This document shows positions 3,576-47,333 of a stretch of 64,000 bases of DNA, piece by piece. The stretch comes from Mytilus trossulus (Eukaryota): assembly GCF_036588685.1 (NCBI RefSeq), contig NC_086386.1, forward strand, positions 40,486,001 through 40,550,000, given 5' to 3'. The notes under the pieces are model-generated. The model made no database searches and was not told the DNA's origin. It saw nothing but the letters and a program-made list of their open reading frames with translations. The translations under genes were made by a program, and so were the position numbers. The stretch's first letter is position 1, and each line of letters starts with the position of its first letter.

Positions 3576-6119
3576 ATTGTAACACTTTACAACTATCAAC
3601 TCTGAATGCAGGTAATAAAGCTGCAAGTAACACCCCTCATGTGTATAAATACTTTACAAAACTAAGCTATTTTGGTGTTTCACGTGTATCTGGAACTTTT
3701 TTGAAATTTCAAGTAAAGGCATGTAGGTCCGCACTTGTTCTCCTGTCAGTTGCTAGTGATTTGTTGTCTTCTGACTTCTACGAAATATTCTATGGAGGAG
3801 GAGGGCCCACCTGGACATATGTATCTCGAAACTATGGCTCGAACGAAGCACAATTCAATACGCGAGAGATATTCGATTGTAATAATATGTTATCACTGTG
3901 GCTGAGCTGGAAAAATGGTCAACTCAAAAGTGGAACGGGTTCGATTCTGGGACAGGAAATAATCTTTGAATGGGATGATCCAAATCCTTTAACCATAAAA
4001 GGCATAGGAGTAATGTCGGCATATGGACAAAATGCTACATGGATAATATCTTCTGGAGGTAATTTAAGGCAACACATTATAATTTATAATATTCTTCTAA
4101 CATTGTGACAGATATTTCTCTCTCAGATATATATTTTGTCTCAAATTTAGCCCACATCTGTTAGATCTGTAAAATTGTGTTAAAACATTTTTGTTTCTCC
4201 TTCAGCGGGATTTAAACCCTTGCCTCTCTACAAGGACATGCATTACTTGACTTACAAAAGCTATGATTTTATAGAGCCAAGTTGAAGTATTCTAGGCATT
4301 AAACACGGTGTAAAAGGTAAAATAACAAAATTTCTGAACTCCCAGGAAAGTTCAAAAAGGAAAGTCCCTATCAGATGGCAAAATTAAAAGTTCAAGGACA
4401 TCAAACGAATGAATAACAAATGTCATTTTCCTGACTTGTTTCAGGCATTTTCTTATTTTAAAAAAATGTGGATTGAACCTGGTTTTATCGCTATCAAAAC
4501 ATCTCACTTGTATGACATTCGTTGTGGGTTGTCGAGATATATCCAATGCCTGGGTTTAAATCCCGCTGAGGGAGGACAAAGTATTATTTAATGTATTTGA
4601 AGCATCGAATTATTAGCAAGTTATATTCTAACATTCCGTGTTATGCAATAAAAAAATGTTTTAAAATACCATTTATTTTAAGGTCCACTAGCTGTCCAAT
4701 TTGTGTTCACCAACTTGACTCAAATTTTCATTTTTGATTTATTACAATGTAAAACATTTATCCAGATTATAAATAGTCTAAAATAATTAACAGGGCATGA
4801 GCTCGAGAATATGCAGCTTCGTTTTGTGTGTATTTTAGTATTGACGCCATCTAATTAATTATCGAGTTGACTTCCAAATACCTCCTATGGTCATATAAGC
4901 GATATAAATATAAATATTGATATCACTAGATAGGAAACTCGTGGAATTGGATTTTTCTAGTTTTGTTCAATTTCATATCATACATTTAAAATATATCTTA
5001 ATCGTCGGTCTACCATATATCAAAATTATTTATTGGATTGAACCTGTAAATCAAATGATTTACCTTTGTTTCACTTTCAATGTTGAAACTGCAAGTGAAT
5101 AGTTCATCATCAATTTATCATGTTTATCGTGACTTATTTTAACATTATTGGACCATACTTACAGCGAATTGTTAAAATACTATATCACTATCATAAATGA
5201 TTAAACAAAACGATTTTTTTTTAGATTTTTTATATATCTCGTAGAAAATGCACCTTAAACATGTAAAGGAAAAGTATGAATATTTTACTTGCATTAAGTA
5301 TTTGTATTTTTTAACAGTAGGAAATTATTTTAGTAATTTATGTTTCTCAAAATAGGAATATTCAAAGTTTATTGCTTGACGTCTATAACTCATTTTAATA
5401 ATCCTCATAAAATTTATACTTCAAGAAGTTCATTTCATACAACTTTTTTTTCTTATGGCGAATAGACGAGTTATTTGATTCCGTCGACACATGCTGTATG
5501 CAAGCAACGTATACTCACTATTAGAAACGTAAATGTTGTTTGCCTTAATTTCGTACAAATTTTAATTTTGTAATAAAACTCAATACAATTATTGGAATGA
5601 GGTGATCGATATTGTTTCTTTTTATTAATTGTGTTGCTTGCTGACGAACATGTATATATGTATGCCTATAAAAAAATTGAGTATTTATTCGTATACCGTC
5701 AAGAATACAGAAAAGAGTTTTAAACAAATGCAGTTTGATAAGATACCACAAAACTCTCAGATTTAATTACTGTTTGCTTTTTTAAAAGTACTTAACAAAA
5801 CAATGAACTAATACAATAGATGATATAGTGGCCAACTTTTGAAGTGTGATAAACTTTTTAAAACAAATTTTTGATATTTTCAGGTATCGAAGACAAAGGA
5901 ATTTTTTGTGGATCTGCAAGACAATCTCTAACCAATACAGGTGTTACCACGTACGGCCATTCATTATTTAGTTGTGCCATATCATGTATTTTCAATGTTT
6001 GCGCTGGTTTTGATTACAACAGTAAGATACAGAAATGCCATATTGTAGACGAAAAGGAATTTCTAACAAGCGCAAATGACCGTGACTCCGTAATGTTTAC
6101 TAAATGTTTATCTATTTAG
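3576..6119 (+). CDS. Secreted Methyltransf_FA (FAMeT-like) + PAN/Apple domain protein, paralogue A (5'-partial; exons 3576-4058, 5884-6119)
   Basis: Exon 2 is bounded by ttcag|attgt and ggag|gtaatt (483 nt, phase 1-1). It encodes FQVKACRSALVLLS...FYEIFYGGGG...DC...LWLSWKNG...WDDPNPL, a Methyltransf_FA-like pattern. Exon 3 (cag|gtatc...TAG) encodes a 6-Cys PAN/Apple module (FC..CAISCIFNVCAGFDYN..KC..KC). Splice sites match paralogues B and C. No signal-peptide exon found in the window. Confidence 0.85.
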
Positions 6120-7202
6120 GCAAAAAGTAATTCATGATTTCAAGATATTTCATATTTAGACAACCAACCTTTATATTACCGCAGATCCTATCGATGTTTA
6201 TAAGATAATTAATTGAAAAAAGTATCACTGTTCATGGTTATAGAATAATCATTATCGGAACGTACAAGGCATTCAACTTTGTCCTCGAAAAATGTTAGGC
6301 AATATCACGCTCATCCTCTCTCGTTATGACGACACAAACAAGCCAAAAAAAGTGACGTTCCCATGATACGGCATAATTTCACAGTTTTTAAATGTATAAA
6401 ATCATAGAACCCCAAAAAAAGTATAACTACTGTACTGTTTAATTGTGTAGTTATCTGTTTCTGAATGAAAAATCAATTTGGAAAGTCCATAATCAAATGG
6501 CAAAATCAAATAACAAAAAGCATCAAAAACAATTGGACAAGAACTGTCATTTCCCTGACTTGGTACAGGCATTTTCAAATGTAGAAAATGGTGGATTAAA
6601 CCTAGTTCTATAGCGCTAAACCTCACACTTTAATGACAGTTTCATCAAATTCCATGTAATATTGTTATTCAAATTGTATGCTCAACACTATCATAAACGC
6701 CTCAGGTTTGGCTAGCCACATGACCAGGTTCAATCCACCATTGTTTTCTTCAAATTTCCTGTACCAAGTCAGGAGAATGGCAGTTTATATCCTATAGTTC
6801 GTTATGTGTGCTTGCCTTGTCGTTTGTTTTTTGTTACAATTCAGTGATTCTGTTGTAGTCGACGTGTTCCCCCTGTTTTGGTTTGTAACACGTATTTGAT
6901 TTCTCTCAATATAACATGTGAACAGCGATATATCGCTTTTGCCTATATTTACCATACAACAAAGTAAAGATATTAGAAAAATATAATTTAAAATCTTTCA
7001 CACATTTGAAAAGTGAATTTCAGAAAATTTAAGACTTAAAACAAAATGTTATTTATTTTTTTTTTAAAACAAAAAATACCGAACTCCAAGGAATATTGTT
7101 AAGGTAAATAGCAAATGAAAAAAACTCAGACATATCAAGGGAATGATTAATAACTGCCATTTGGAAAATAGTGGTTTAACTCTGGTTTGACAGCTTATGT
7201 AA

Positions 7203-8110
7203 TTGAAAACAGAACGGGGAACCTGTCACAGAGACAACAACCCGACCATAGAGCAGACAACAGCCGAAGGTCAGCAATGGATCTTCAACGCAGCGAGAAA
7301 CTCCCGCACCCGGAGGCGTCCTTCAACCGGCCCATACAAGAATATATATACTAGTTCAGGGATAATGGCCGTTAAACTAAACTCCAAATTATACACAAGA
7401 AACTAAATTTTAAATTCAAACAAGACTAACAAAGACATGAGACATCAACCCTCCCTGTATATACCTCTAGCCAATGTAGAAAAAAATAAACACACAATAA
7501 TACACACAATTAAACTTTGTTTTACAGAAGACTGAGTCAGATGTCAGAATAGATAACGAAAGAAAATAATCAAAATGACAATAATATATAGATTAACATA
7601 AGACTACAAGCAGTTACTGACATGCCAGCTCAAGACCTCAATTAAACTGATTGAAAGATTATGTCTTCATTATATAGATATCAAGCACAATCCCTCCCGT
7701 CAGGGATATAGTATTATTATGAGAAGCACATAACCTGTGTCATGCCAACAACTGGTTTTAGAATAAATGTGTTTAATTCAGATGCAAAGACCCTTTGAGT
7801 GAATCAAAGTTAAAGCCAAAATATGCAATTTTTGACAACAGTATTATAACGTTATCCCTTCTTAGTAAGTCTGTTTAAAGGTTTTGTTAGTTTTCAAAAG
7901 AGGTGCATACTTATTTTTTGTGCTTTGTAAAGAAAATTACCATAAAAAATTGGATGTGAAATACACGAACGTATAAGATGTCTGGATGTAAGGTCATTTT
8001 GGCGAATGATGTCATTATACCAATGATCAAATTTAGTGAGGGTTTTGACAAGTTGGTGATATTGAAAACCCTGGTATAATATTTTTTTAGTCAAACATAC
8101 ATTTCTCTCG
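7203..8110 (-). mobile_element. 5'-truncated Penelope-like retroelement fragment (RT C-terminal/thumb region plus 3' tail)
   Basis: Minus strand encodes ERNVCLTKKILYQGFQYHQLVKTLTKF...ISHPIFYG, resembling the LTxKLLxQGF..KF region of bivalve Penelope-like RTs. Absent from the paralogous duplicated site at about 21585-21600. Confidence 0.6.
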
Positions 8111-10109: not shown

Positions 10110-10430
10110 AGAGCCGTCACGTAGTGATCATCTCATCGGAATACATACGAAAAGGTTCCTGGTTAAATCCCCGGGGAGAAAAATTTTCGGCTATATGTTG
10201 ACACCTTTTGTGAGTATTGATTTTAGAAGCGATAATAGTCCATCGGAAGGGGACGATTAATGGAGATAGAGCCATATCTTTTTTACGTAAACGACACCCT
10301 TGTATATTTTGAAAAAGAGCATGTTAAAACAGCTACAAGGCAGCACTCACACCCGCAAAGTGAAAAGGGATTAGTATAAGTTTCAATATCTTAATAATTT
10401 ACTCCACTATAAATAAATATGTTTAAAGTA
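10110..10430 (+). mobile_element. tRNA-derived SINE with Deu/Nin-like central domain
   Basis: B-box-like ggttaaatcc, then agtccatcggaaggggacgattaa...gacacccttgtatattttgaaaaagag. Absent from the paralogous duplicated region near 23170. Confidence 0.45.
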
Positions 10431-11794: not shown

Positions 11795-12640
11795 CAATAA
11801 AGACAACAGTACTTTACCGCTGTTCAAAATTCATAAATCGATTGAGTAAAATCAAATCAGGGTTAAAAACTAAAACTGAGGGAAATACATAAAGTATAAG
11901 AGAAGACCTACGACACAACAAAAACACAACTTTAAAATGTAACACACACAGAAACGAAGTAGAAGAAAAATATGGTCATTTTCCTGACTAGGTAAATGAC
12001 ATTTATTTAAAATAAATAATGTGTTGAACCTGGTTTTGTGGCATGCCAAACCTTCCGCCTTTGTGGCAATGTTAGATATGATTTTGAAATGACAACACTA
12101 AATGATAGGACCACAATACAAATAAATGGGAGAAAATATATTGTTATCAAAAGTACCAGGATTATAATTTTATACGCCAGACGCGCGTTTCGTCTACATA
12201 AGACTCATCAGTGACGCTCAGATCAAAATAGTTAAAAAGCCAAACAAATACAAAGTTGAAGAGCATTGAGGACCCAAAATTCCAAAAAGTTGTGCCAAAT
12301 ACGGCTAAGGTCAGAGGAACACACGAATAATAGCTAAAAAAAGGTTCCAGGTATAAGATTAAATACGCCAGACGCTCGTTTCGTCCACACACCAGTGACG
12401 CTCTGATGAAAAAAGTTCTGAAGCCAAAAAAGGTATATAGTTTAGCTTTGAGAACAAAAAAAATCGTAGAGTTGTGCCCAATGCGGCTAGGGTTTTCTGC
12501 GTGGGATAAGAACATCCTTATTATTTAGAAGAATTCATACTTTGCAAAAAGTATTTTTTTACAGATGACTATAAAATAGATATAAATGATAAAACCAGTG
12601 ACTTACTACAACATAAAAACGGATAGATAAATACCATGAA
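11795..12640 (-). mobile_element. Hammerhead-bearing interspersed repeat (Penelope terminal-repeat / non-autonomous retrozyme-like) with one intact and one degenerate hammerhead
   Basis: Colinear with 56517-57365 and 1410-1920 (caacagtagtataccgctgttcaaaa...ttcctgacttggtacagg...gggataagaa). Contains hammerheads at 12174-12217 and (degenerate) about 12364-12401. Boundaries approximate. Confidence 0.6.
12174..12217 (-). ncRNA. Type I minimal hammerhead ribozyme (intact core)
   Basis: Minus strand reads GCGUCA-CUGAUGA-GUCU(UAUGU)AGAC-GAAA-C(GCGC)G-UC^UGGCGU: CUGANGA and GAAA cores, GUC cleavage triplet, 4-bp stem II, stem I GCGUCA/UGGCGU, and a very short palindromic stem III. Confidence 0.85.
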
Positions 12641-13472: not shown

Positions 13473-16400
13473 ATGGACCTAATTATTAACAAAAACATTC
13501 TGACACCGTTCATTGTGAATTTAATATTTTACATGATTAGTTTCAAAGGTAAGAATCATATCATTTTATTTTATTTTCAAATAATACATTTTTTGTATAA
13601 CCGAATTATATTGCCAATATATCCCTAAATAGTATAATTAAGGATGTTAGCTTTATTATTTTTGATTTTTTACAGATAGTTGGATATCCATGAAATGCCA
13701 TAAACACCATCTCCCTGCTTAACCAGACTGTTCTTTTCATTGTTTTATTTCATATAGTTTAAAAAAAAAATAAAAAAAATATTCCAAAATGCTATAAAAT
13801 ACATGAAATAGTTGTAATTAGTTTTCTTTATTTTCTTATAAAGCGTAGTGAGTATATATGTATTTCATATTTCCGGCAAAATATCTTTTTGAAATATTTT
13901 TTTTGTGCTGTATTTAGACCTCTCTACCACCAAATTTGTTTTACATGCGCACGTATTAAAATTGTTATCATACACAATCATAGGTTTGAACATTGTTCGC
14001 AATTTACACTTTTTTATATTTTTTAAATTTTGGAATTCTTTTATGTTTTTTCTCAGGTTTATATGATTCGTTCATCCTATTTCGACTCTTTCAAATTCAA
14101 GAGTCTATCCTTAATTGAGGTAAAATATATGGCATTCCAAATATCGTTTCGACACATAACCTGACTAAAAGGATATCAATTGTCGAAATCCGTACGAATG
14201 TTTGCACTTTATGTTTGTGGTAAACCATCTTTCCCGCTAGCTTTTTGCTTTCTGTATGGTATCAAATTGATATAAAGAACCATTTTGTTACAACAATTTA
14301 TTTGACCATCTTTAATTGCAGCCAACAGAGATTAAGAACATCAGTTGTTCGACCTGTTTGTGAAATGAGTTCTGTAAGAATACATGTGGAATATACGTTT
14401 TAACTTTCTTTAGACTTTTGGAAAATGTTTTTTTGTGCTGTATTTGTGCTATAACTTTTGGACTAGTTTAAATCTCGGTATATTTCTGTAATTTGTTCTT
14501 ACTTACTTTTGATTTTTTAACTCTATATGCTTACATTCCTATGTAAATTTTAAAACTGTTTGTATGCACATTGAACGACAAACTTATGTGACGTATACAA
14601 ATTTTATGACGTCAGACACTCAAGTCAATCCATGTGTTCGAAGATAGATGTTTTTGTGTTCTGTTTAATTGTCCCTTTTAAAATTGTTATTCGATGATGA
14701 CTGATGTACCCATATTTTGACTATTTTATTAATTGTGACTATTTATTTAACGCATCATGTTAATATAACGGAATTTGGTGAGACTGTTATTAAAGAGAGA
14801 GGGTTAGCGCTATAGAACCAGGTTTAATCCACCATTTTCTACATTTGAAAATGCCTGTACCAAGTCAGGAATATGACAGTTCTTGTCTATTCGTTTTTGA
14901 TGCGTTTTGTTATTTGATTTTGCCATGTGATTATGGACTTTCCGTATTGATTTTCCTCTGAGTTCAGTATTTTTGTGATTTTACTTTTTTTGTATTATGA
15001 CACCTCTCCTACAATTTTTTTTAAAGCATAACGCAGTTTTTATCCAACGCAATCACAAGTTTGAACGTTTGTTTTCTATTAAGACTAGATATATATATAG
15101 ATTAAAAAAATCTGCATTGATTATAATACGAAATTTATCCACTGGAGACCGATAGATTTTCAAATTTATGACGCGAGGCTTGCTGAGCGTTTGAAATAGT
15201 TAAATATAACTGGCGACAATTTTTATAAATCATATTCCACGACATTTGGTGTTGAAATAAGTTTCGCTAATGATTTTAAGCCGATATGCAGAAAATGTTA
15301 ACCCTTATATCCATCGATCTGCAAAAGAATATTTTTCTGAGGAGACGAATACAGTATAAAGTAATAATAAAAATTTGACTAATGAAGAACTAAAATGATA
15401 CGTACCACACGTTGATTTAAGAAAAATAATCAACGGGTTAAGAAAAGGATCAATCGGGTATAAATTATGGGAATTTTTTTATCGTGCAACTTATATTCTG
15501 GACTTAACGTTTTGGTTGCTTAAATAAATGAAATCGATTTAGCTTGAGCTCGGATTGCAAACAAGACCAATACTGAACTGTAACACAAAAAGAAATTTTA
15601 ACATTACAGTTCATTTAAGTATATCTAACAGGAGACCAGAACAAATGAAGTACACATTCATTTGTGAACGTGATATTTTAACAATTGAATTTTATTGCTA
15701 ATTATCGGATAAAAGCATTCAAATGACAGAGGAATTTAGCACAACTAGATTGAAAAGAATATTTTCACGTTTCAATGAATACTTAAAGTTTCATTAATCA
15801 CGTTCGAAATAAATCATTTCCTGATGTATCTTACGCTTTTAAGTTGTAATACAAAAAATAAAGAATCCAGTGTACCGTTATGATAAATGCAATACGTTTA
15901 TTAAGATCTCTATCAAAGAGTTTATTAAATATATAGAGATGAAAGAACACATTTCAAAATACATTTAATTCTTTAATGACATCTACATAAATTGCTGGTT
16001 GTAAAAAACTTTTTATCAAAGGTTTCTAATCCTTTATTCAAACACATTCTGTTATTGTAACTTTTCTAATTCTTCGTCAATTTATCCCTTTCTGCACCCG
16101 TTGTTTAAAAAAAATAATCAACGTGTGGTTGTTTTGATCTCAGTTTTTCGTTGGTTAAAATCCGAGTATGACGTTGAATTTTCTTGTTTTCCTCTGAATT
16201 TCCTATTGTGACGGCATGACAAAAGGCGACAGTGCCTGATGACGTCATATAAAAAGAACACATCTTTCTGCAGATCATTCGAAAAGAAGGAATACGTTTG
16301 CCTGCATATTATTAGAGAAACAGATTCTATCACCAAATCTCGTGTAATACGAAATTTAACCACTCTCGACAGTTAAGTTTCAAATATTTATAACGCTCGG

Positions 16401-19400
16401 CAAGACTCGCGATTTAAATTTGAAAATTTTACTGTCTCGAAGTATAAATATCGTATCACGCTTTATTACAACACATTAGTATATATTGAGCTAGTATAAC
16501 ATATCCGTTTGCAGACCAGAACAAAATTAATTATATTTATTTATATATTCATTTATGACGTTTGTTTTTAGTATTTGGCGTGCATTCGGCAAAGTTTTAT
16601 CGTAACTGATTTTTTACAAATTTAATGTTTACTAAGTGTTTGATCAGACTCAATTACCAAAAAATTTTTGTGAGAGACCTAATTTCTTGATTCAGCTTAA
16701 CACTATATTCAATAGAGTAACATAAAGGGCTCATATGTGGAAAAGGATCTATTAATCGATTGGAGCTCATGATATAAGCAGCGGTAATTAGAAGGATTCG
16801 AGTTCTTTAGACAATATTTACTGTGTTCAGCAAAAAGTAAATTCACAAAAATAATAATTGGAAGGTCCATAATTACATGATTAAATCAAATGACAAAACA
16901 CATCAAAAACGAATGGCTAAGAACTGTCATATTCTCGACTTGGTACAAGGATTTTCAAATGTAGAAATGGTGGATTAAACCTGGTTTTAAAGCGATGAAC
17001 CTCTTACTTTGATGACAGTCTCATCAAATTCCGTTATACTTACAATGATGCTTGAACTAAACAGACAAAATAAATAAAATAGTCAAAATATGGGTACTGC
17101 CGTCATCCTCGTGTAACAATTTAAAAGGACCAATTTAACAGAACACAAATATTTATTTACAATCACATTCGTAATGTTTCGTATTCGACGTCGTTTGTTA
17201 AAAAGTGCCAAGACGTAGCCAGTTTCTCTTTGAATGTATTTAAATGTCGTCTAGGTATTTTCTACCTGGTTTGTGTTATCTTAATTTAATCATAGAGAAC
17301 AATCACGAAATTCTAAGTTTAATTGCAAGTCAAGCCAATCAGAGTATACCAACTATGCATGTGTAGTCCTCCTTCAAAATTTAATTGGGGAAAGTATCGT
17401 CAGATCACTGAAGTCATATTTGATCATATTGTAAACAATGATATTATGGGGAGAAGCTGAGGAAATATTCAAACAACTTTCATGTTAATAAATGCATGAA
17501 TTTTCTTGATGTCCGCATATATAATCAAAAATTAATTTAATTGGTAATTTCTAGAATACGAAATTAACATCCAGTACTCACGACTGTTTTGAGTTCCTAT
17601 TCCTCTATTCCTCTGGAGGCCTATGTTCCACAGTTCATAGACCGACCCGCTTCTCTCATAAAATGCACGTTTGCTTGTCTGCAAAACATACAGAGACAGC
17701 TGTACACTTAAACCTCAGATTTTAAATGTAAAGTTAAGCAGTCATTTGAACCGTTCATTGTCACTTCTATTATCTTTCTTAGACAAGTTTTCAGTGCATT
17801 TCCATTTAAATTCGTGCATGTATATCACTGTATGTAACATGTCATCTTGTGCTCTACCAAACTATTGTGGTCTACATAAAAATCATACAAGTTATATACA
17901 AGAACTTTTTGCCTTTCTTTTATTTATTTGATAATATTTTAAGTGAAACGATTCCACCTTCGCAGCTTTATTTTACTTTATTGCATTTTCAATTCGTTTT
18001 CTTATTATAATAGACTCATTACTTTTTTAAAATAAGATAACTTTCATGGATACCAGTAGTTGAAGTCATAAAACTTTGCTCAGTGCTTGGAGCACAAAAG
18101 TCATGCTCGAAACATGAAATCAAGCAGTTTGATTGGTTGATTTTGTAGTATGACTACAAAAAACTGATTCGAAAGTTTTATAACCGCACGGCCAGATTTT
18201 TTGGTTTGTATATTACACATACGAAGATGTGTTATAAGATCCAATGAGACAACTCTCCACCCAAGTCACAATTTGTAAACCATTGTCTTGATAAAAACTT
18301 GACAAATTAATATGTACTTCGTTGAACATTTAAATTCGTGGTCTACATCCGACCACGAAATCCACGTAAACTGTTATGACAGCAGTTATAATAAATCAGT
18401 CAGCAATATGTGTTTGTATGCTTTTTTTTGGTATAGCAATTATTTTACTCGTTTCAGATTGTAACACTTTACAACTATCAACTCTGAATCAAGGAAGAAA
18501 AGATGCAGAAACAAACCGTGATGTGTATAAATACTATACAAAACTTAGCTATTTTGGGGTTTCTCATGTATCTGGAACTTTTTTTAAATTTCAAGTTAAG
18601 TCATGTAGGGCTGCAGTTGTTCTCTTGTCAGTTGCAAGTGATTTAATGTCTCCAGACTTCTACGAAATATTCTATGGAGGAGGAGGGAATCGCTGGACAT
18701 ATTTATCTCGAAACTATGGCAGGAACGAGGCAGCATTCAATACACCAAATCTATTAGACTGTAATGATAGGGTTTCACTGTGGCTGAGCTGGGAAAATGG
18801 TCAACTCCAAAGTGGAACTGGTTCGATCCTGGGACAGAATAGAATGATGAATTGGAATGATCCATATCCCTTACCCATTAAAGGCATAGGAATCATGTCG
18901 GCATATGGACATAATGCTACATGGATAATTCCCTCTGGAGGTAATTTAAGTCTAAACGATATCTATTCCAAACGAAATGATATATATGATTAGTCTAAAC
19001 ATATGTCGACTTTATGATAGACATTCTCTTTCAGATAATCGTTTATTATACAGGACTACAATCATAATATAGGTACATAATTTTTTTTTAATTAGCCCAA
19101 AAATGTAAGATCTGAAAATCTGCGTTAACAAGTTTGGGGTTTATTCCTCCGTGGTATATCGATTTGAAACCGCTTATGTGCGAGGAACGTTATAACTCGA
19201 TTACCGAACGCTTTATTATTATATAACCAAGTTGGTAGAGTGTTTTATGCGCTGGACACATTGTTTGCAGAATTACCAAGATTTCTCAGATGCAGAGGTT
19301 TGAACCCCTCTGAGGGAAGAACAGATGAAGTATATTGTATTGAAATATTGAATTACTCGCAAGTAATATACTACCAATCAGTTTTCTGCATAAATCAAAA

Positions 19401-20255
19401 CATAACAGTTGGATTTACTGAACGTTTATTTACAAGAAAAGTAAAAATATTTCAGTTGAGTTAAGTATTTTTATTCATTAACAGTAGGAAAACTGTCTTA
19501 GTACATTATGTTTAACAAAACTATTGTAATCGTAAGAATTTCTCAAATTATCATGGACGTCTATAACTTCAGAAGTTGTTCATTTTATGCAACTGCTTTT
19601 TCTTATCTTCTTTGTATAGAAACAGCACATGCTGTATGGTAGAAACTTCGACGATTTCTTCAAGACCTGCTTGAATTTCCTAAAAAAAAAAATCTGATAT
19701 GACACTCAATAAAATCATTGAAATGAGGGGATCGATATTGTTTCTTTTTTAATGGTCTGGTTTGAATACATTGATAGCAGTGCCTATAGAGTTTTATATT
19801 ATTTATTCGTTTAGCGTCAGGAATACAGTAAAGAGTTTTCAACAAATGCAGTTTACCTTATAATATAATTTTCCGTCAGTGTTTTGCTATCACAGAATCA
19901 TTCAATGTTTTATATTTTAAATGAAAATTACAAAGCAAGAAACAAATACAATAGATCATATGACTTCTTACTTTAAAAGTGTAATAAACTTTTATTCAAA
20001 TGTTTTGTATTTTCAGATATCCAAGACAACGGGAGATTCTGTGGATCCCCAGGACAAACTCTTACCAATGCGGGTGTTATTACATACGACCAATCACTCT
20101 TAAGTTGTACCTTAACATGTTTTACTTCTAATGTGTGTGCTAGTTTTGATTACAACAGTAAGCTACAGAAATGCCATATTGTAGATGAAAAGGAATTTCT
20201 TGCGAGCGCAAATGGCATTGACTCCGTAATGTTTACTAAATGTTTGACAATTTAG
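13473..20255 (+). CDS. Secreted Methyltransf_FA + PAN/Apple domain protein, paralogue B (exons 13473-13548, 18458-18940, 20017-20255; 265 aa)
   Basis: Exon 1 reads MDLIINKNILTPFIVNLIFYMISFK with a phase-1 donor aaag|gtaaga. It joins in frame to exon 2 (ttcag|attgt ... ggag|gtaatt, 483 nt) and exon 3 (ttcag|atatcc ... TAG; DIQDNGRFCGSPGQTLTNAGVITYDQSLLSCTLTCFTSNVCASFDYNSKLQKCHIV...KCLTI). All introns are GT-AG and the frame is intact. Confidence 0.88.
14590..14988 (-). repeat. High-copy interspersed repeat (aaaagtaaaatcacaaaaatactgaactc... family)
   Basis: Related copies at about 2045-2240, 4313-4515, 6455-6655, 16833-17160, 25130-25530, 28130-28475, 49435-49540 and 50495-50628, most containing the ttcctgacttggtacagg motif. 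Confidence 0.7.
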
Positions 20256-32700: not shown

Positions 32701-33008
32701 ATTGGAAGAAAAGGGCGGTATTGGTTATGCGTGTTATTTCCCAAGTCATATTTTAAATGAATGTGATGATTTCAATTTGATTCAATAAAGTCCGTTCAAA
32801 AATTGAAAGACTAAGAGGCTTAGCACATAATCATCTAATTTTGCCGAAGTTAATTTTGAGTCATGCCTTCTTGTACGCATGGAACTAGTTTTATATTATT
32901 TTCTTCATTTGCAAAACGTTAAAGGAATGTGTATCTGACTCGCAACTAAATTGTTATCTTAATTATTGAAAAATACAGCTCTTAATTTATGCTATGTTTT
33001 ATTTCAGA

Positions 33009-34709
33009 ATGTCAAACCATTCGAAAAGTTGTAACATATGTGACGATAGACATATAACAAAACAAGCAACCCATTGGTGTTCAGAATGTGAACAAGCTTT
33101 TTGCAACGAATGCAAAGAATATCACGCATATTCAAGGTTATCCAAAAACCATACAACAATTTCGATGTCAGATTTTTTATCACTAGAGCCATCATTTTCC
33201 TCTATAACAAGTGTATGTGCTGAACATAATGACATTTATCAAATCTTTTGTCGTACCCATGATAAGCTTCTTTGCCATAATTGCTTAGCAAACCATGATG
33301 GGTGTAAGGGCATAGTTCCGCTGACTGAGATTACCAAAACTGTGAAATCATCATCCAATTTCCAAGAAACGCAACATGGTTTAACTGATATACATGAAAA
33401 CATAACTAAAATTCAGGATGCGTTTCTATTGTCTTTAAAATCGATAAAAGAGGAAGAACTTATACTTTTGTCAGAGATTGGTACGACAAGGAAGAAAATA
33501 GATGACCATTTAGACAAGCTCGAACACGACCTCAGAAAAAAAGTTTCAGAAGAAGCAGCCAAATCACGCGCAGCCATTGAAGTATTGTTACAGAAACTTG
33601 ATGATCGAAAATCGGAAATTACAAATCACTTGCAGCAAATGAAATATTTAGAAACTTACGCATCCAATTTTCAAACCTATCTTAGCCTCAGGCACCTTTC
33701 ATCTGCTGTCGATTCTGCTGAATTATTTGTTAACTCGATGGCTAACGATGGAAGTTTAGAAATAAATACATTAATTTTGAATTTTGATAAAAAGATAAAG
33801 ATAATAGTAAGCAATATACAGCAGTTCGGTATAGTACAGGTTCAGAAAAAGACGTTCAGCGTGCCACTTATACGACAGAAGGACAAACAAGCTCAGCTAG
33901 TCGGATTAGGACGACCACATGTTAAGTCGATAAATGACATTAAGCTTAGATTATTTAAAACGATTGAAACAACATGCCGAGCTATAAGAGGTTGTGAAAT
34001 CCTTCCAAATGAGAACATGCTCTTTAGCAATTATACCCTGACAGGCCGCGTACTTGTTTTTGATTCTAATGGAAAACGTTTGTTCGATGACTTAATGAAA
34101 CCTGATAGACCGTGTTTAGATATTACAGGTATGGGTGATAATTCGAAAGTAGCAATTACTTGTGGTTTCGTTCATGGTATAGAAATTGTAGATATTAGTA
34201 AATCTAAATTAAAACTACAAAAACGCATACCGACTAAAAACGGTTGCTTTGGAGTGGCATTTAATGATGATTCCTTATTTTGCTGTATTCACAAAGAGGG
34301 TATACAGAAAATTAATTTAGACAACTACAGTTTATCGCCCATTGTCAAATTTGATTTGACGTTCGGATACATCGCTGTAAACAACAACAAGATTTATTAC
34401 ACTGACCGCGACAAAAATACTGTTACGTGCTATGACATGCAAGGTCAATTATTGTGGAAATGTAAAGATGACACTTATTTGAAAGCCCCATGTAATATAT
34501 CAGTCGATAACAACGAATTTGTATACGTTGTAAGCGAGGAAAAGAATAGTATTACAGTTTTGTCACCTGATGGACAGGATAAAAGAATGTTGTTGACAAA
34601 TTCTGAAGGAGAAAACTTACCTCGTGCTTTACATTTTGACAGACTTAGAAATCGTCTACTTGTTGCTTTTGAAGAAGCAACAACATTTTTGTTTGACGTT
34701 TCGGTATAA
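33009..34709 (+). CDS. RING-less TRIM-like protein: B-box1, B-box2, coiled coil, NHL-type 6-bladed beta-propeller (566 aa, single coding exon)
   Basis: B-box1 CNIC...ATHWCSECEQAFCNECKEYH...H and B-box2 CAEH...FCRTHDKLLCHNCLANH, then a helical coiled-coil region and NHL-like repeats (KIYYTDRDKNTVTCYDMQG, PCNISVDNNEFVYVV, PRALHFD). An acceptor tttcag directly precedes the ATG at 33009, implying a non-coding upstream exon; the ORF-track start at 32994 is probably intronic. Confidence 0.92.
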   Translation: MSNHSKSCNICDDRHITKQATHWCSECEQAFCNECKEYHAYSRLSKNHTTISMSDFLSLEPSFSSITSVCAEHNDIYQIFCRTHDKLLCHNCLANHDGCKGIVPLTEITKTVKSSSNFQETQHGLTDIHENITKIQDAFLLSLKSIKEEELILLSEIGTTRKKIDDHLDKLEHDLRKKVSEEAAKSRAAIEVLLQKLDDRKSEITNHLQQMKYLETYASNFQTYLSLRHLSSAVDSAELFVNSMANDGSLEINTLILNFDKKIKIIVSNIQQFGIVQVQKKTFSVPLIRQKDKQAQLVGLGRPHVKSINDIKLRLFKTIETTCRAIRGCEILPNENMLFSNYTLTGRVLVFDSNGKRLFDDLMKPDRPCLDITGMGDNSKVAITCGFVHGIEIVDISKSKLKLQKRIPTKNGCFGVAFNDDSLFCCIHKEGIQKINLDNYSLSPIVKFDLTFGYIAVNNNKIYYTDRDKNTVTCYDMQGQLLWKCKDDTYLKAPCNISVDNNEFVYVVSEEKNSITVLSPDGQDKRMLLTNSEGENLPRALHFDRLRNRLLVAFEEATTFLFDVSV

Positions 34710-39085: not shown

Positions 39086-39167
39086 AAATCGGTATAGTTA
39101 TTTGCCCAAATCCAGATTTGCAATTTAGTGGTCATAGTTATCAAACGTACCAGGATTATAATTTAGT

Positions 39168-39211
39168 ACACTAGACGCGCGTTTCGTCTACATAAAACTC
39201 ATCAGTGACGC
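39168..39211 (-). ncRNA. Type I minimal hammerhead ribozyme (core intact, stem I weakened)
   Basis: Minus strand reads GCGUCA-CUGAUGA-GUUU(UAUGU)AGAC-GAAA-CGCGCG-UC^UAGUGU. Same flanking repeat (gtaccaggattataattt) as the 12174 copy. Confidence 0.7.
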
Positions 39212-42200: not shown

Positions 42201-43482
42201 CATCTTACTTATTTGTTTTTCAATAATACAAATTTATACTATCCACTATGCATATTGTTTAGTCGCCATGAGGTCAGATTTCTGGCATATTTTGTTTGAA
42301 ATTATGTAGTGGATCATTATCTAATGATAAGCTTATATAGCATGTTGTTTGTCTTTACTTTTGTTCATTTCCTTTGATTTGCCGCGTTTTTCCCTGGGGA
42401 ATGACCATTTGATATTTCACGAGGGGGAGGTAAGGGAAGGATGATAATTTGAAAGTAAATAGACCTGGTAAGAACTGATAAGTAAAAACTTTACTGTCAA
42501 TAAACGATCTAAATTAAATATGTTCAGAAGTGAAAATAAGGTAAAAAGCGGCCAAAAGGCACGCGTAGCAACAGTAGGAAAGTAATGAATCCCGGAAATC
42601 GTAATTCACACTGTTTTACGCGGGAAAACCAAATGGCCACATCCTTTCCATGTTGTTGAATGATTAAATGATATTCTTAAGCTTAATGCACAAACAATGT
42701 TAAAATTTGACTTTATTTTTTTATTTTTTTTATTTCCTTGTCCTGAATATGCATTTTATTTTACTTTGGCCGTTAAACAATCCGTCAGCATCAACGTTTT
42801 TCCTCAAATATATAGATTAAAAGATAATTTGATTGCAAACGAGATAAATCTCCAGTAGAAACCAATAGCGAAAATTAAGTACGTTTGGAAAAATATAATC
42901 TTTGGACAATATAAAATGCATTTCTAAAAACGCATTTCGTAATAGTATATAGGAATACAGCCTAATTGTCAGTATTTCGTTATCTACGAAATAAAATATT
43001 ATCACAGCAATATGAGACAGCGAAGACAGATATTATTAGTTACATAGTTTGTTAGTTACCTAATATTTCGTCTCTCCACGCGGATGCTTTTAACCAATCA
43101 TATTCCTAGAAATGTTTAGGAGGTAAGATTTAATGCAATATAGGAAAGTGGATAAGGCCTTGTGAAATGGAATTAAGTCATTGCTCTATGTAAAAATCAG
43201 GTATTTTTAATGAGTCTTTATGTACATAATACTTTAACCAAAGTGCATAAATATGTTAGGTTCACAATACATATCTAAAATTAAATGGAAAAAAATCAAT
43301 TGGCTGATGCTTTTATCGGATGTTTGTGACAAGCACGTTTTTCAAAAGGTATATTTGTATATGAAGTATTGAATTGTTGGCTTGCTTGTCACATTTATCC
43401 AATACGCGCGAAAGCTAATCGAGATTTTTTTTCCATTTTATTTCATATTTTGTTTTACACTTACCTTAATTCGACTCATAAA

Positions 43483-46400
43483 ATGGATGTTATGTTTTAC
43501 CAAATCAAACTGATGCATTTAAGTATTAATATGATTTTATTATTCGATGGTAAGTGCTTTTCTATTTTTTTATTATTGATATCTTAGCGAGAAAATGGTG
43601 CTTTTTTCGATGCATACTGTATTTAGAGGGAGGAGTGTTTGATTTAATAATTTTAGTAATGTATTTACTTTGTTGACAGATTTTTCTGTGGACTGTTACT
43701 TTAATAGATATAGGAAGATGTGGTGTGAGTGCTTTATTTGAAAATCATCAATACCACATAAAAAAACTGGCGAATTTATCTATCGAATTCGACATATCAC
43801 CGGCTCTGTATTTATATGAGCAGCACGATAGGTGTCACATGTATAACAGGATCAGTTTAACCCTCTGGAGCACATTTGAGCCCCTCCCCATGTTTTGTTA
43901 GTGATCGGTTTTTGTCTTAGGTTATGTGTGTCGTTTTGTGAGCTGTTTGTTTTTCTTTTATATTTTAGCCTTGACGTTGACAGTTAATTTAGTTTAAATG
44001 CCTCGTTAATATTCTTCTCTATTTTATATAAGTATCGCTTTCTTATCAAATTATCAACAAATACTAAGATAATGCAAATAACACAATTTTCGTATCTGTG
44101 GAAAAGAAAATCGTTCATTTCATAACTTTAAGGCATGTTACGTTACATTGATTTAAACTGTGATTTGATTAACCTGATCATCAGTTTCAATATATACCTG
44201 ATTTAGACGGCAGCTCCACGGCTGTTCCTATATACATTAATGATTATGAAATTTTATCAGAAGCAAACATATAATCATTTTAAATGCATTTAATCAACTT
44301 TAGCTAACATCTTGTGCTCATTTAGGATTGTATTCAAGATCTGTATAATATAAAAACAAAAATATGTTCTGACCCTTGAAATTGCAAATATTGCGTTTTT
44401 CTTCAAAATAAAGATAAAAAAAGGCAACATGAGTAAACCGCTGTTCAATAATCAAAGTTAGAAAATATAATATGAAATGTATTGCCTTTCCGTATCTGAT
44501 TAGTCTGGAAAAACGGAAATCGACCTAATATTCACCTTTGAGTTAGCACCTTAGACTTTTTGATAGTTTCTTATTTTATCAAGGATATTTAAGCAATGTG
44601 AAGATGACTTGCTAATTATATCCTTAGTGAATATCAATCTGTAGCGGTATCAACCGAGTAACACAAAATTAAGAGAAAACAAATTGAAAACCTTTAACAA
44701 TATCATTTCATGAAAACTGTGAATTAGAATATAATTTACACAGTTAAGTATAATCATGTTTAGATATAAGATATTTATTTTTATCAAAATAGGTTTTGTA
44801 ATTTTGTTTCGTCTAATATTTTGTATACAAATGATATTTATTGTTGCAGTTTGCAACTCTTTAAGACTATCAACTACTAATCAAGGAAACATAGATGCCG
44901 AAACAATTCCAAATGTGTATGAATTTTATACCAAACTGACCACTTTTGGTGTATCTCGCGTAACTGGAACTTTTCTGACGTTTCAAGTTAAGTCATGTAG
45001 AGATGCAGCTGTCCTCTTGTCCACTTCGGCTGATTTAATATCAACCGATTTTTACGAAATATTCTACGGAGGAGGAGGAAATTCCCAAATATTCTTATCT
45101 CGTAACTTCGGCACCAATGTTGCACAATCAAATGCAAGAAATCTTTTGGATTGTAACAATATGGTAACACTGTGGGTCAGTTGGGCAAATGGTATACTCA
45201 AAACTGGAACAGGGTCGATCAAAGGACAGAATCAAATCATGGAATGGAATGATCCAAACTCATCCTTAGATGTTGCAGGCATTGGCATCATGTCTGCATG
45301 GGGAAGTAATGCTGAATGGATATTTTCATCTGGAGGTAATTAAGAAAATAATTTTACGGTATATATTTTACAATGACCAATGAAAGTAATGCATGTTTAT
45401 AATATCCATATTGAGAGTTTACTAATATAAAGCAATATGGTAAAAAACAGATACCAGAATTTATCGATGCTCAAATCTCGTAATTACCTCTAGAGCATAC
45501 AAATCAAGATAAAGGAATTGCATAAATCCCCCATTATTAGTTTTACTGCGTTCGTGAACAAGATAACCACAAGAAGATTTATGATTCAAGATAAGACAAC
45601 CAATTAATGATGGTGCTAGTAAATTTGAAAAAGTGCCAATTTTAGTCCTTTTTCATTAAATCCCTGTTGAACCAGTTTTTATACTTTGGATTCATTATTA
45701 TTCGTAATTCGGATATCAATTTTCATGGATACAAGTGAGCCACGAAATTAAATGTTCAACGAATAACCAAAACTTCTATATACTTGTAAACACACTTTTT
45801 TGAAAAACCATGAAATTTAATATCCACGAAAAGTTTTCCTTAATCCACGACATTTCATTTTCAGTCACTTAGTTCATTTTCAGAATTATCCATGTTATCA
45901 ACTGTCGATAATTCAGTACTATTCAGAAAATTCGCACACCTGCAGTTATGAACTGCTCTTTCTGATCGACATCATACCTATTCTTTAAAAGTACGCAACT
46001 GAATGAAGTAGGTTTGTAAAAAACATGACAGAAAGACTGAAATGGATAAATATTTTAATAAACTTTTGAGACAAAAATTCATTTACTAGTTGGTTGAAAA
46101 CCACATACCATAAGTAAAACGGTCAAATAATGTTGCGTGCTATTTCCTTTCGTGCACACTCCTTGTCATAATTTGTTATAACGTGCATAAGCAATCACGT
46201 ACCATATTGAGATGTGAAAATCCCGTTAAAACATGCGGAAGACATACGTTTTTGTATAACCGCTTAAATAGAAATGAAGCAAAAAAACAAAAAAACTGCA
46301 TTTGTAAGTGTGTCATTTATTATCAATTAAAATTGTCTTTATGTTGCAAAATGATACAGACTATGACAAAGATACAGAACTCATAGTTTAATAGTACAAG

Positions 46401-47333
46401 AAGTGTACATAATTAAAATCTTACTTTATGAAGAAATAGAACTAGTAAAAAAAACTGACTTGGTAAATTATTTTTTTTAAAGAAAACGGTCAGCTTAACT
46501 GGTTTTTAGCTAAACTCTCACTTGTTTGATAGTTGTTTTACTTTATTGTTCTGTTTAATTGTTAGCGTTGGCAGAAATATGGGTTAGTCAGTGACCAGGT
46601 TTCATTGATTATCTAACAGTGTTATTATGAACATGTCTAGATGATTTTGTTAGATTTTGCTTAAATTTGCTTTAGATGTTTTACATTTATTCTGCTTTAT
46701 ATGAGGACAGATAAAGTCTGGGAGTATATAAAGGTGTGTTCAATAATACTAATTAAAAAAAAGAAGATGTGGTATGATTGACAATGAGACAACCCTCCAC
46801 AGGAGACGAAAGTGACACAGAAATTAACAAATAAAGGTCACGGTGCGGCCTTCAACAATGAGTAAAGGACTAATCGAGATACCGACTGGTTTTTCAAATA
46901 TCACAAAACTCTACAAAAATGCCAGGAAAAATTCATATATGTTGCGTGCTATAATATTTGAAATCAATATATTTTAGGTAATGCAGTAAAAAATGTTGGA
47001 ACAAAAAAAAACATTACTATAAGTTAAATGATTTTTTTTTAAATAATAATAGTATCTTAGGTTTCATCGTAGATGACTTAATCTTTCATTTCAGATATCG
47101 GATATGATATAAAGTTTTGTGGATCTGCAGGAAAAAAATTCACTAATACAGGTGTTACCATGTACAACCTAACGGAATTAAAGTGTGCTTTCAGATGTAT
47201 TGGGTCTGATTCTTGTGTGGGCTTTGATTACAACGACAAACTACAGAAATGCCATATGGTTACAGACAATGGCTTTCTTCAAAACGGACATGACAATGAC
47301 TCCATATTGTATACTAAATGTTGGTCAATTTAA
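43483..47333 (+). CDS. Secreted Methyltransf_FA + PAN/Apple domain protein, paralogue C (exons 43483-43549, 44850-45335, 47095-47333; 263 aa)
   Basis: Exon 1 reads MDVMFYQIKLMHLSINMILLFD with a phase-1 donor gatg|gtaagt and the same start context as paralogue B (tcataaaATGga). Exon 2 is ttgcag|tttgc ... ggag|gtaatt. Exon 3 is ttcag|atatcg ... TAA, encoding KFCGSAG...KCAFRCIGSDSCVGFDYNDKLQKCHM...KCWSI. Confidence 0.88.

What the first reader, a model, noticed from the sequence alone, without database searches (positions are those of the whole stretch)
3576..47333. Tandem family of small secreted 'FAMeT domain + PAN/Apple' proteins, one module per exon
Seen: three paralogues share the same phase-1 exon layout (signal peptide / Methyltransf_FA-like domain / six-Cys PAN-Apple domain), about 265 aa, with no transmembrane segment or catalytic partner. 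Known: the Methyltransf_FA domain lacks a canonical SAM-binding motif, also occurs in extracellular proteins such as CPAMD8, and its methyltransferase role is disputed; PAN/Apple domains bind proteins or glycans. Inference: these are two-domain secreted binding proteins (lectin-like immune recognition, or mucus/shell/byssus matrix) built by phase-1 exon shuffling, likely to be mis-annotated as enzymes. I do not know of a functional description of this architecture.
Basis: partly seen in the sequence, partly recalled or inferred. Interest (0 to 1): 0.8.

Follow-up and report, generated by a model that had tools for sequence, protein, structure and literature searches.

The report
Secreted lectin-like FAMeT plus apple proteins
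Three neighbouring mussel genes each encode a small, probably secreted protein made of a galectin-shaped "FAMeT" domain and an apple domain; they belong to a very large mussel gene family that databases name after an enzyme or after CPAMD8, although the fold points to a binding role.

Summary
Three same-strand genes sit at the stated coordinates. Each has a Methyltransf_FA (PF12248) exon, followed 1.1-1.8 kb downstream by a six-Cys PAN/apple exon. All junctions are phase 1.

I also found a homologous short ATG-to-donor leader exon for each gene. That of gene 1 lies 5.9 kb outside the window. The models come to 261, 265 and 263 aa.

The genome is very probably the Mytilus trossulus RefSeq assembly. 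All exons are intact in a second collinear copy on contig C26, and dN/dS is below 1.

An AlphaFold model of the M. galloprovincialis orthologue shows a galectin/ConA-like beta-sandwich and no Rossmann fold. A model of gene 3's own PAN exon matches only PAN/apple structures.

The trio is a small part of a much larger family:
- The genome holds at least 150 FAMeT exons.
- At least 13 further FAMeT-then-PAN pairs lie elsewhere in the genome.
- Two other first-reader notes on other pieces of this genome describe similar arrays.
- Relatives occur in Mytilus and Haliotis. Public records name them "FAMeT domain-containing" or "CPAMD8".

Three things are not shown: splicing, secretion and ligand. No RNA run was listed, no protein model of these three genes is in the database, and SignalP was not available.

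Verdict: a real family of non-enzymatic, probably secreted binding proteins whose function is unknown. Interest is moderate.

The parts
3576..4058 (+). Gene 1, FAMeT-like (PF12248) exon. Phase 1 at both ends, 483 nt.
   Evidence: Boundaries. PF12248 scores 70.1 bits. 85% identical to M. galloprovincialis P0001.
5884..6119 (+). Gene 1, six-Cys PAN/apple exon with its stop codon.
   Evidence: Boundaries. PAN_1 scores 20.6 bits, just under the 21.4 cut-off. 88% identical to the C-terminal part of P0001.
13473..13548 (+). Gene 2, candidate exon 1: ATG, 25 codons of hydrophobic leader, then G|gtaaga (phase 1).
   Evidence: Found. Homologous to gene 1's candidate outside the window. Unique to these loci. 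The exon has two substitutions and no indel in the C26 copy.
18458..18940 (+). Gene 2, FAMeT-like exon. Phase 1 at both ends.
   Evidence: Boundaries. PF12248 scores 70.0 bits. 96% identical to the M. galloprovincialis fragment P0003.
20017..20255 (+). Gene 2, PAN/apple exon with its stop codon.
   Evidence: Boundaries. PAN_1 scores 26.4 bits.
43483..43549 (+). Gene 3, candidate exon 1: ATG, 22 codons, then G|gtaagt (phase 1).
   Evidence: Found. Aligns with gene 2's candidate with an in-frame 9-nt gap. Recovered by a gene 1 + gene 2 exon-1 profile as the second-best non-self hit in the window, at a marginal E of 0.1. Three substitutions and no indel in the C26 copy.
44850..45335 (+). Gene 3, FAMeT-like exon. 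Phase 1 at both ends.
   Evidence: Boundaries. PF12248 scores 79.8 bits. 81% identical to M. coruscus P0002.
47095..47333 (+). Gene 3, PAN/apple exon with its stop codon.
   Evidence: Boundaries. PAN_1 scores 29.0 bits. Its own AlphaFold model has pLDDT 83.4. Nearly all chains listed for it are PAN/apple-type domains.

Best explanation
Each of the three genes encodes a protein of about 29 kDa with no catalytic domain that most likely acts outside the cell. It has three parts:
1. A short hydrophobic N-terminal leader, most likely on a separate upstream exon.
2. A galectin/ConA-like beta-sandwich, which is the domain Pfam calls Methyltransf_FA.
3. A six-Cys PAN/apple domain.

The proposed mechanism is as follows. 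The leader sends the protein into the secretory pathway. The two compact modules then each bind a glycan or protein ligand. The molecule therefore works as a small two-site binder or cross-linker, in microbe or particle recognition or in assembling an extracellular matrix such as mucus, shell or byssus.

The trio arose by tandem duplication within a very large, lineage-expanded mussel family whose domain exons are phase-1 symmetric.

Shown here: the gene anatomy, the domains, the folds, sequence constraint and the family context. Inferred: splicing of exon 1, secretion, ligand binding and the biological role.
For: Fold of the FAMeT-like domain, from a model of P0001 (orthologue of gene 1; mean pLDDT 83.4; block means 88-96 over residues 11-160 apart from one block of 78):
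- VIA-align gives Z 12.0 to CBM66 and Z 11.9 to galectin-11 and LEC-6, with rmsd 2.7-3.8 A over 122-137 residues.
- Foldseek finds GH16 glucanases and galectin CRDs from E 2e-5.
- The domain has almost no helix.

PAN/apple module:
- In the P0001 model it gives Z 9.8 to the HGF N domain and Z 9.4 to the TgMIC4 apple domain.
- Gene 3's own exon model has TM 0.72-0.74 to HGF and plasminogen PAN, and also matches the lectin SML-2 and factor XI apple domains.
- At sequence level it hits TgMIC4 at E 3e-5.

Leader:
- Candidate exon 1 is homologous in all three genes, with the ATG context, open frame and G|GTAAG donor in the same phase.
- Its DNA occurs at only 4 places in the genome, these loci and their C26 copies.
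- P0104, a RefSeq model of a paralogue in the same genome, has 16 N-terminal residues that are not encoded in the FAMeT exon, which it enters in phase 1.
- Relatives of 265-282 aa have ordinary N-terminal signal-like leaders. Some are encoded whole on Logan contigs of about 1 kb, which I read as spliced transcripts.

Constraint:
- dN/dS is 0.30-0.71 between paralogues.
- It is 0.14-0.26 between the C14 and C26 copies for five of six exons. The sixth had no synonymous difference.
- All 12 domain exons are intact.

Literature passages: FAMeT is doubted as an enzyme (PMC10015273). Secreted FAMeT-domain proteins occur in shell matrix and adhesives.
Against: - No RNA run was listed for gene 1's locus, so no junction has been seen in RNA.
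- The search of 5.8 billion proteins found no model of these three genes among proteins of 88-280 aa. RefSeq proteins of paralogues from this same assembly are in that collection. The genes may therefore be unannotated or weakly expressed.
- The leaders are atypical. They have a Lys at position 7-9, a very short polar end, and 10-residue hydrophobicity of 1.76-2.42 against 2.32-3.64 in relatives. SignalP was not available.
- A rival start exists. All three genes, in both genome copies, keep an in-frame ATG followed by hydrophobic residues directly upstream of the FAMeT exon. This weakens my earlier argument from indels in that region.
- Gene 1's PAN_1 score is under the cut-off.
- Fold likeness does not show function. 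The galectin family was not hit by Pfam.
- If the leader is removed before the first Cys, the mature protein would have nine Cys, an odd number.
Confidence: 0.6

Rival explanations
1. The proteins are the same, but their role is specifically shell-matrix or biomineralisation (or adhesive) structural components secreted by the mantle, not immune lectins.
For: From passages read:
- Haliotis nacre protein UP5 is 'SSP, methyltransf_FA' and is called a major shell-matrix protein (PMC6003135).
- FaMeT-domain genes are up-regulated in M. edulis shell repair (PMC8194122).
- Six sea-star footprint proteins carry FAMeT domains (PMC9382459).

The FAMeT+PAN architecture also exists in Haliotis (P0125).
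Against: None of those papers' main-text passages links a FAMeT+PAN protein, or this subfamily, to shell. There are no expression data for these three genes. The window proteins have no acidic, repetitive or disordered regions typical of matrix proteins, on reading the alignments.
Confidence: 0.2
2. A gene-structure rival. There is no upstream exon 1. Transcription starts just before the FAMeT exon and translation starts at the in-frame ATG that adjoins it, giving two-exon genes with a 13-33 residue hydrophobic leader.
For: In-frame ATG plus hydrophobic read-back is present in all three genes and in both genome copies. The M. galloprovincialis model P0001 starts at such an ATG.
Against: - A perfect pyrimidine tract plus CAG acceptor sits at the same codon position in all three genes.
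- Gene 3's read-back differs at 10 of the 35 positions the two copies share.
- Most paralogous FAMeT exons in this genome have no ATG in the short read-back.
- P0104's first 16 residues are not encoded next to its FAMeT exon, which it enters in phase 1.
- P0001's leader would be only 6 residues long.
- A conserved, locus-specific exon-1 candidate exists.
Confidence: 0.25
3. The three genes are silent or decaying copies of a birth-and-death family and make no protein.
For: No RNA run was listed. No protein model of 88-280 aa exists for them in the database. A degenerate exon-1-like copy with an early stop lies at 17654-17738. Several family exons elsewhere carry stops.
Against: - All 12 domain exons are intact in both genome copies.
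- dN/dS between the copies is 0.14-0.26 where it could be computed.
- Splice sites are intact.
- Orthologues are kept in M. galloprovincialis and M. coruscus at 81-96% identity.
Confidence: 0.12
4. They are farnesoic acid O-methyltransferase enzymes, as the Pfam name implies.
For: The only support is the family name PF12248, plus a Gly-rich 'YEIFYGGGG' stretch that superficially recalls a SAM-binding motif. The form of that motif is recalled, not taken from any call.
Against: - The predicted fold is an all-beta sandwich with almost no helix, and the Gly-rich stretch lies in the strand region E74-81/E86-91 of the P0001 model (residue mapping by hand). The listed structural neighbours are mainly lectins, carbohydrate-binding modules and glycosidases; no methyltransferase is among them.
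- No methyltransferase family was hit by Pfam.
Confidence: 0.03

Closest known systems
Arthropod FAMeT proteins (PF12248 once to four times, usually followed by DUF3421/DM9)
   Same: They share the PF12248 domain. Their function is also unclear and they are doubted as enzymes (PMC10015273 passages).
   Different: The passages read for the arthropod proteins describe PF12248 in tandem or with DUF3421, with no PAN partner. The window proteins have a hydrophobic leader and a PAN/apple domain, and Pfam finds no DUF3421.
Molluscan shell-matrix and shell-repair FAMeT-domain proteins (Haliotis UP5; M. edulis repair-induced genes)
   Same: They are mollusc proteins with a secretion signal and a Methyltransf_FA domain (PMC6003135 and PMC8194122 passages).
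   Different: No PAN domain is mentioned for them in the passages read. I could not compare sequences because the supplements were closed. These three genes have no expression data.
Sea-star footprint (adhesive) proteins Sfp1, 3, 4a, 5, 7 and 8
   Same: They are extracellular secreted proteins carrying FAMeT domains of unknown role (PMC9382459 passages).
   Different: They are large multi-domain proteins with EGF, hyalin, WAP or vWF domains, from an echinoderm. They are not small two-domain proteins.
CPAMD8 (the name RefSeq gives to several family members)
   Same: CPAMD8 contains a Methyltransf_FA domain in an extracellular protein (PMC9363628 passage). RefSeq transfers its name to small mussel and abalone FAMeT+PAN proteins.
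   Different: Nothing else is shared. The window proteins are 261-265 aa, and Pfam finds no A2M, thioester or Kazal domain.
Galectins and other ConA-like lectin or carbohydrate-binding modules
   Same: The fold of the FAMeT-like domain is similar. Z is 11-12 with rmsd 2.6-3.8 A over about 120-137 residues.
   Different: Sequence identity is only 5-12%. Pfam finds no galectin hit. I did not see the canonical galectin sugar-binding motif in the alignment; the motif itself is recalled and was not formally tested.
PAN/apple domains (HGF N domain, plasminogen PAp, TgMIC4 and SML-2 lectins, factor XI apple)
   Same: The matches include Pfam PAN_1 hits, six Cys, the fold and a sequence-level hit to TgMIC4. 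TgMIC4-A5 and SML-2 are listed in complex with galactose-type sugars (entry titles).
   Different: The ligand here is unknown. Fusion to a FAMeT-like domain appeared in none of the passages shown by five of my literature searches.

Membership tests
Pfam PF12248 Methyltransf_FA | Profile HMM score above the gathering cut-off of 24.2 bits. | tested here: met
   Scores are 70.1, 70.0 and 79.8 bits for the three exon frames.
PAN/apple (Pfam PAN_1 PF00024) | Profile HMM score above the gathering cut-off of 21.4 bits. | tested here: inconclusive
   Gene 2 scores 26.4 and gene 3 scores 29.0, both above. Gene 1 scores 20.6, just below.
PAN/apple | Apple-type pattern of six conserved Cys (three disulfides; pattern recalled) and a beta-sheet-plus-helix fold. 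| tested here: met
   Six Cys are invariant in the three exons, and five of them are invariant or nearly so across 17 family exons. Gene 3's exon model has pLDDT 83.4. Its listed matches are nearly all PAN/apple-type, with TM 0.7 or more to HGF and plasminogen. Disulfide pairing was not examined.
Class I SAM-dependent methyltransferases | Rossmann-like alpha/beta fold with a SAM-binding motif. | tested here: not met
   The model of orthologue P0001 is an all-beta sandwich. Its neighbours are lectins and glucanases. Pfam finds no methyltransferase family.
Galectins | Galectin CRD profile match and the canonical sugar-binding residues. | tested here: not met
   Only the fold is shared, at Z about 11-12 and 5-12% identity. 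Pfam gives no galectin hit at E<=0.1. Binding residues were not examined in the model.
Secreted proteins with a cleavable signal peptide | N-terminal signal peptide predicted by a trained method, or shown by experiment. | tested here: inconclusive
   Hydrophobic leaders exist under both gene models, but they are atypical. SignalP was not available, and there are no RNA or protein data.
CPAMD8 / alpha-2-macroglobulin family (the RefSeq name of relatives) | A2M, thioester and receptor-binding domains in a protein of well over 1000 residues (domain set from the PMC9363628 passage; size recalled). | tested here: not met
   The models are 261-265 aa, and Pfam finds only PF12248 and PAN.
Molluscan small FAMeT+PAN two-domain family | A protein of about 250-285 aa with a leader, then PF12248, then a PAN-like domain, the domain exons being joined in phase 1. 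| tested here: met
   Of 10 relatives tested, 10 have PF12248 and 10 have PAN_1 at E<=0.1, with 5 of 10 above the cut-off. RefSeq models P0104 and P0153 map exactly onto this genome with phase-1 junctions. The window genes match this layout.

The most novel reading that the evidence does not exclude
The domain that Pfam calls a farnesoic-acid methyltransferase is really a galectin-fold glycan-binding module. On this reading, the mussel's 150 or more FAMeT exons form a large, rapidly diversifying repertoire of secreted recognition lectins, comparable in logic to the expanded C1q or FREP families. The PAN/apple-coupled members, including these three genes, would be two-site glycan binders used in immunity or particle sorting.
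Probability: 0.3. Interest if true: 0.7.

Novelty: new variant of a known kind. Interest (0 to 1): 0.45.

Why it matters
If these proteins are lectin-like binders, a whole Pfam family name and the RefSeq 'CPAMD8' labels on many mollusc proteins are misleading. One of the larger lineage-specific gene expansions in mussels would then gain a testable function in glycan or matrix binding.

It would also give a structural rationale for why FAMeT domains keep appearing in shell matrices and marine adhesives, where papers currently list their role as unknown.

For these three genes alone the gain is modest. They are ordinary members of that family, and nothing yet shows that they are expressed.

Tried and rejected
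1. RNA evidence. The look-up of sequencing runs on window 2800-6200 listed no RNA run. Its single search was then spent, so read laying was never called.

2. The look-up of encoding contigs for the M. galloprovincialis locus was closed. I could therefore not compare orthologous upstream DNA.

3. My first signal-exon scan used strict thresholds and found nothing shared. A conserved 46-nt island (2922-2967 and 17815-17860) looked like a candidate but has no usable open frame plus donor. A search for the 'MHGE' start of the M. coruscus model found nothing in the window.

4. I first argued that non-3n indels in the C26 copy of gene 2 proved the stretch before the FAMeT exon to be intron. One search showed that an in-frame ATG survives in both copies, so I withdrew that argument as decisive.

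5. A sequence search of the PDB with the FAMeT exons gave 0 hits at E<=1. No solved structure of this domain exists at sequence level.

6. Literature. Searches for Methyltransf_FA+PAN, Methyltransf_FA, FAMeT+mollusc+secreted, farnesoic acid O-methyl+bivalve+expan and FAMeT+galectin+fold returned nothing, in the listings and the passages I read, that describes a FAMeT+PAN protein or a galectin-like fold for this domain. Only this held library was searched, and supplements were closed. The supplementary gene lists of PMC8194122 and the sequences of PMC6003135 may hold such proteins.

7. The FAMeT exon 75 kb upstream (C14:40411382) is a distant family member. No PAN exon lies within the 3.3 kb downstream that I held.

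8. The joined step was left out. I never spliced the exons into one protein for any search, fold or note. I searched exon by exon and used the database protein P0001 as the two-domain stand-in.


Full report
WHAT IS THERE

The window has no N and is 27-35% G+C. Three open frames on the + strand match Pfam PF12248 (Methyltransf_FA) at 70.1, 70.0 and 79.8 bits, against a cut-off of 24.2. Each is followed 1.1-1.8 kb downstream by an open frame with six Cys. These match PAN_1 at 20.6, 26.4 and 29.0 bits against a cut-off of 21.4, so two of three pass.

Reading the junctions gives these exons:
- FAMeT exons at 3576-4058, 18458-18940 and 44850-45335. Each follows a pyrimidine tract plus CAG and ends G|GTAAT.
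- PAN exons at 5884-6119, 20017-20255 and 47095-47333. Each follows ...CAG and ends at a stop codon.

All junctions are phase 1, so the FAMeT exon is a symmetric 1-1 exon. The finding's start and end are exactly the first and last of these coordinates.

The three FAMeT exons are 63-74% identical in protein to gene 1, and the PAN exons 51-71%.

THE LEADER EXON

A scan for ATG, hydrophobic stretch and a phase-1 donor found one candidate per gene:
- Gene 2 at 13473-13548 (25 codons, then G|GTAAGA).
- Gene 3 at 43483-43549 (22 codons, then G|GTAAGT).
- Gene 1 outside the window, 5909-5843 bases before its first base (22 codons, then G|GTAAGA; locus L035).

The gene 1 and gene 2 candidates are plainly homologous. 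DNA identity is 71% at E 1e-12, and this DNA occurs at only four places in the 1.30-Gb genome: these two loci and their copies on contig C26.

Gene 3's candidate aligns with gene 2's. They share the same 'TCATAAAATGGA' start context, the gap is an in-frame 9 nt, and the donor is aligned. A profile of the gene 1 and gene 2 candidates recovers gene 3's candidate as the second-best non-self hit in both strands of the window, but only at E 0.1.

In the C26 copies the candidate exons have two and three substitutions respectively. They have no indel, whereas gene 3's 5' flank has two.

With these exons the coding lengths are 786, 798 and 792 nt, giving 261, 265 and 263 aa.

Against this model, one search shows that in all three genes, and in both genome copies, the frame of the FAMeT exon stays open upstream to an in-frame ATG through hydrophobic codons. 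A two-exon model therefore cannot be excluded. My earlier indel argument is not decisive.

In favour of the three-exon model:
- Most paralogous FAMeT exons in the genome have no ATG in their short read-back.
- The RefSeq model P0104 maps exactly, with residues 17-186 in one exon flanked by phase-1 junctions. Its first 16 residues are encoded elsewhere.
- P0153 shows the FAMeT-to-PAN junction in phase 1.

Under either model the protein starts with a hydrophobic leader. The leaders are atypical, with 10-residue hydrophobicity of 1.76-2.42 against 2.32-3.64 in relatives. No trained predictor was available.

WHOSE GENOME, AND IS THE TRIO ALIVE

Two lines of evidence identify the genome:
- RefSeq proteins named Mytilus trossulus sit on contigs of 81,773,519 and 88,129,055 bases. 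These are the lengths of C14 and C5 of this genome.
- Two such proteins map exactly onto the genome.

The genome is therefore very probably the M. trossulus RefSeq assembly.

A second collinear copy of the region lies on contig C26, at 80-99% DNA identity. It is either a haplotig or a recent duplication.

All 12 domain exons are intact in both copies. dN/dS is 0.14-0.26 between copies for five exons, and the sixth had no synonymous change. Between paralogues dN/dS is 0.30-0.71.

Orthologue-like proteins exist in M. galloprovincialis and M. coruscus:
- P0001 is 85-88% identical to gene 1.
- The fragment P0003 is 96% identical to gene 2.
- P0002 is 81% identical to gene 3's FAMeT exon and 65% to its PAN exon.

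Against expression: no RNA run was listed. The word-indexed search of 5.8 billion proteins found only those three proteins (3 at E<=0.001 among 62 candidates). It found no model from M. trossulus itself within 88-280 aa.

THE FAMILY

PF12248 matches at least 150 exon-sized places in this genome, all above the cut-off. The tool scored 150 of 200 candidates, so this is a lower bound. The same search found 0 of 14 control genomes. Fifty of the matches are on C8 and 24 on C14.

A profile of the three PAN exons finds 25 places at E<=0.01:
- Six are the window genes and their C26 copies.
- Of the other 19, 15 lie 0.5-11 kb downstream of a listed FAMeT exon on the same strand, involving 13 distinct FAMeT exons.
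- The remaining 4 have no listed FAMeT exon nearby.

A further array of such pairs lies at C14:60.08-60.14 Mb. Two other first-reader notes on other pieces of this genome describe similar arrays. I tested that claim only through these genome-wide searches.

In the library of 1.84 billion representatives the FAMeT profile finds 1470 clusters at E<=0.001. My local PAN profile hit 12 of the 152 proteins then on file, including P0001 and P0002.

Ten relatives of 251-282 aa were scanned:
- 10 of 10 have PF12248.
- 10 of 10 have PAN_1 at E<=0.1.
- 5 of 10 are above the PAN_1 cut-off.

Of 86 small members (300 aa or less, one FAMeT stretch), 84 match PF12248 and 26 match PAN_1 at E<=0.01. I had dropped 15 proteins before that count: 12 with two FAMeT stretches, and P0039, P0088 and P0146. 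The set also includes members of the clusters I had looked up, which inflates the PAN share.

Named members come from M. edulis, M. galloprovincialis, M. trossulus, Haliotis rufescens and H. cracherodii. Their names are 'Farnesoic acid O-methyl transferase domain-containing protein', 'C3 and PZP-like alpha-2-macroglobulin domain-containing protein 8' or 'uncharacterized'.

Three clusters are known only from Logan contigs of about 1 kb that encode whole 251-267 aa proteins. I read these as spliced transcripts of relatives. Several relatives have ordinary signal-like N-termini.

The window subfamily is distinct. The next relatives are 34-39% identical, and they carry a C-terminal Cys-rich tail that the window proteins lack.

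FOLD

As the two-domain stand-in I folded the database protein P0001 with 85 relatives. Mean pLDDT was 83.4, with 10-residue block means of 88-96 over residues 11-160 apart from one block of 78.

The FAMeT part is an all-beta sandwich:
- VIA-align gives Z 12.0 to CBM66, Z 11.9 to galectin-11 and LEC-6, and Z 11-12 to several galectin CRDs, with rmsd 2.6-3.8 A.
- Foldseek lists GH16 beta-glucanases and galectins from E 2e-5.
- No methyltransferase appears in either list.

The tool notes that Z under 8 is common by chance. These values are above that, but the tool also says that a shared fold shows no function.

For the PAN part:
- In the P0001 model it gives Z 9.8 to the HGF N domain and Z 9.4 to TgMIC4 apple domain 5.
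- Gene 3's own PAN exon, folded with 16 family exons from this genome, has pLDDT 83.4.
- The chains listed for that model are nearly all PAN/apple-type: HGF, plasminogen, TgMIC4, SML-2, factor XI and prekallikrein, AMA1 and MANEC. They also include four entries of a fungal copper oxidase, which I did not examine. TM to the query is 0.6-0.78. Only 2 matches have E<=0.001.
- At sequence level the PAN exons hit TgMIC4 at E 3e-5.

The FAMeT exons hit nothing in the PDB at E<=1.

READING

The best-supported reading is a secreted protein with no catalytic domain, built from a galectin-fold module and an apple module. It is one small clade of a large mussel expansion of phase-1 FAMeT exons.

I could not decide among immune recognition, particle or mucus binding, and shell or byssus matrix. 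The shell and adhesive literature makes a matrix role a serious rival. That literature comprises passages of PMC6003135, PMC8194122 and PMC9382459.

The enzyme reading is very unlikely given the fold and passages of PMC10015273.

NOVELTY

- The domain, its extracellular occurrence and its doubtful enzymology are in print.
- The FAMeT+PAN architecture is in public protein sets without a functional description.
- Five library searches showed me no paper describing this architecture or a galectin-like fold for the domain. Supplements were closed.

I therefore rate this a new variant of a known kind, of moderate interest.

Noticed in passing
window 32994-34709 (+): A single-exon 571-aa open frame lies between genes 2 and 3. 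It has a B-box zinc finger (27.6 bits, above the cut-off) and a weak beta-propeller-like C-terminus. It looks like a TRIM-like gene.
   Followed up: partly
window 17654-17738 (+): A degenerate second copy of the exon-1 sequence lies only 0.7 kb before gene 2's FAMeT exon. It has the same 'CTCATAAAATG' start context, but its frame stops after 20 codons. It may be the relic of an older, closer exon 1.
   Followed up: partly
window 2922-2967 and 17815-17860 (+): A 46-nt island is 85% identical between the introns (or upstream regions) of genes 1 and 2, at the same distance of about 0.6 kb before the FAMeT exon. It has no usable open frame plus donor. It could be a regulatory element or a relic.
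   Followed up: partly
G000 contig C26:1.30-1.45 Mb (L031-L033): This is a second collinear copy of the whole cluster at 80-99% identity, with all domain exons intact. It is either a retained haplotig or a recent segmental duplication.
   Followed up: partly
G000 genome-wide, especially C8:54-57 Mb: At least 150 PF12248 exon matches occur in this genome, 50 of them on C8. No paper in my searches describes this expansion.
   Followed up: partly
Public protein names (P0104, P0153, P0154, P0164, P0165): RefSeq names small FAMeT+PAN proteins of Mytilus and Haliotis (183-281 aa) 'C3 and PZP-like alpha-2-macroglobulin domain-containing protein 8'. The name seems to be transferred through the shared FAMeT domain alone.
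   Followed up: partly
window 62147-62467 (-): An open frame has a weak MFS_1 transporter match, at 20.4 bits against a cut-off of 33.4. It is probably one exon of a neighbouring transporter gene.
   Followed up: partly
G000 C14:40411382-40411741 (L034), 75 kb before the window: A more distant FAMeT exon lies here, with no PAN-like exon in the 3.3 kb downstream that I held.
   Followed up: partly
window 12174-12217: Another first-stage note (s1-830109) reports a minimal hammerhead ribozyme here. It lies 1.3 kb before gene 2's candidate exon 1. I did not examine it.
   Followed up: no
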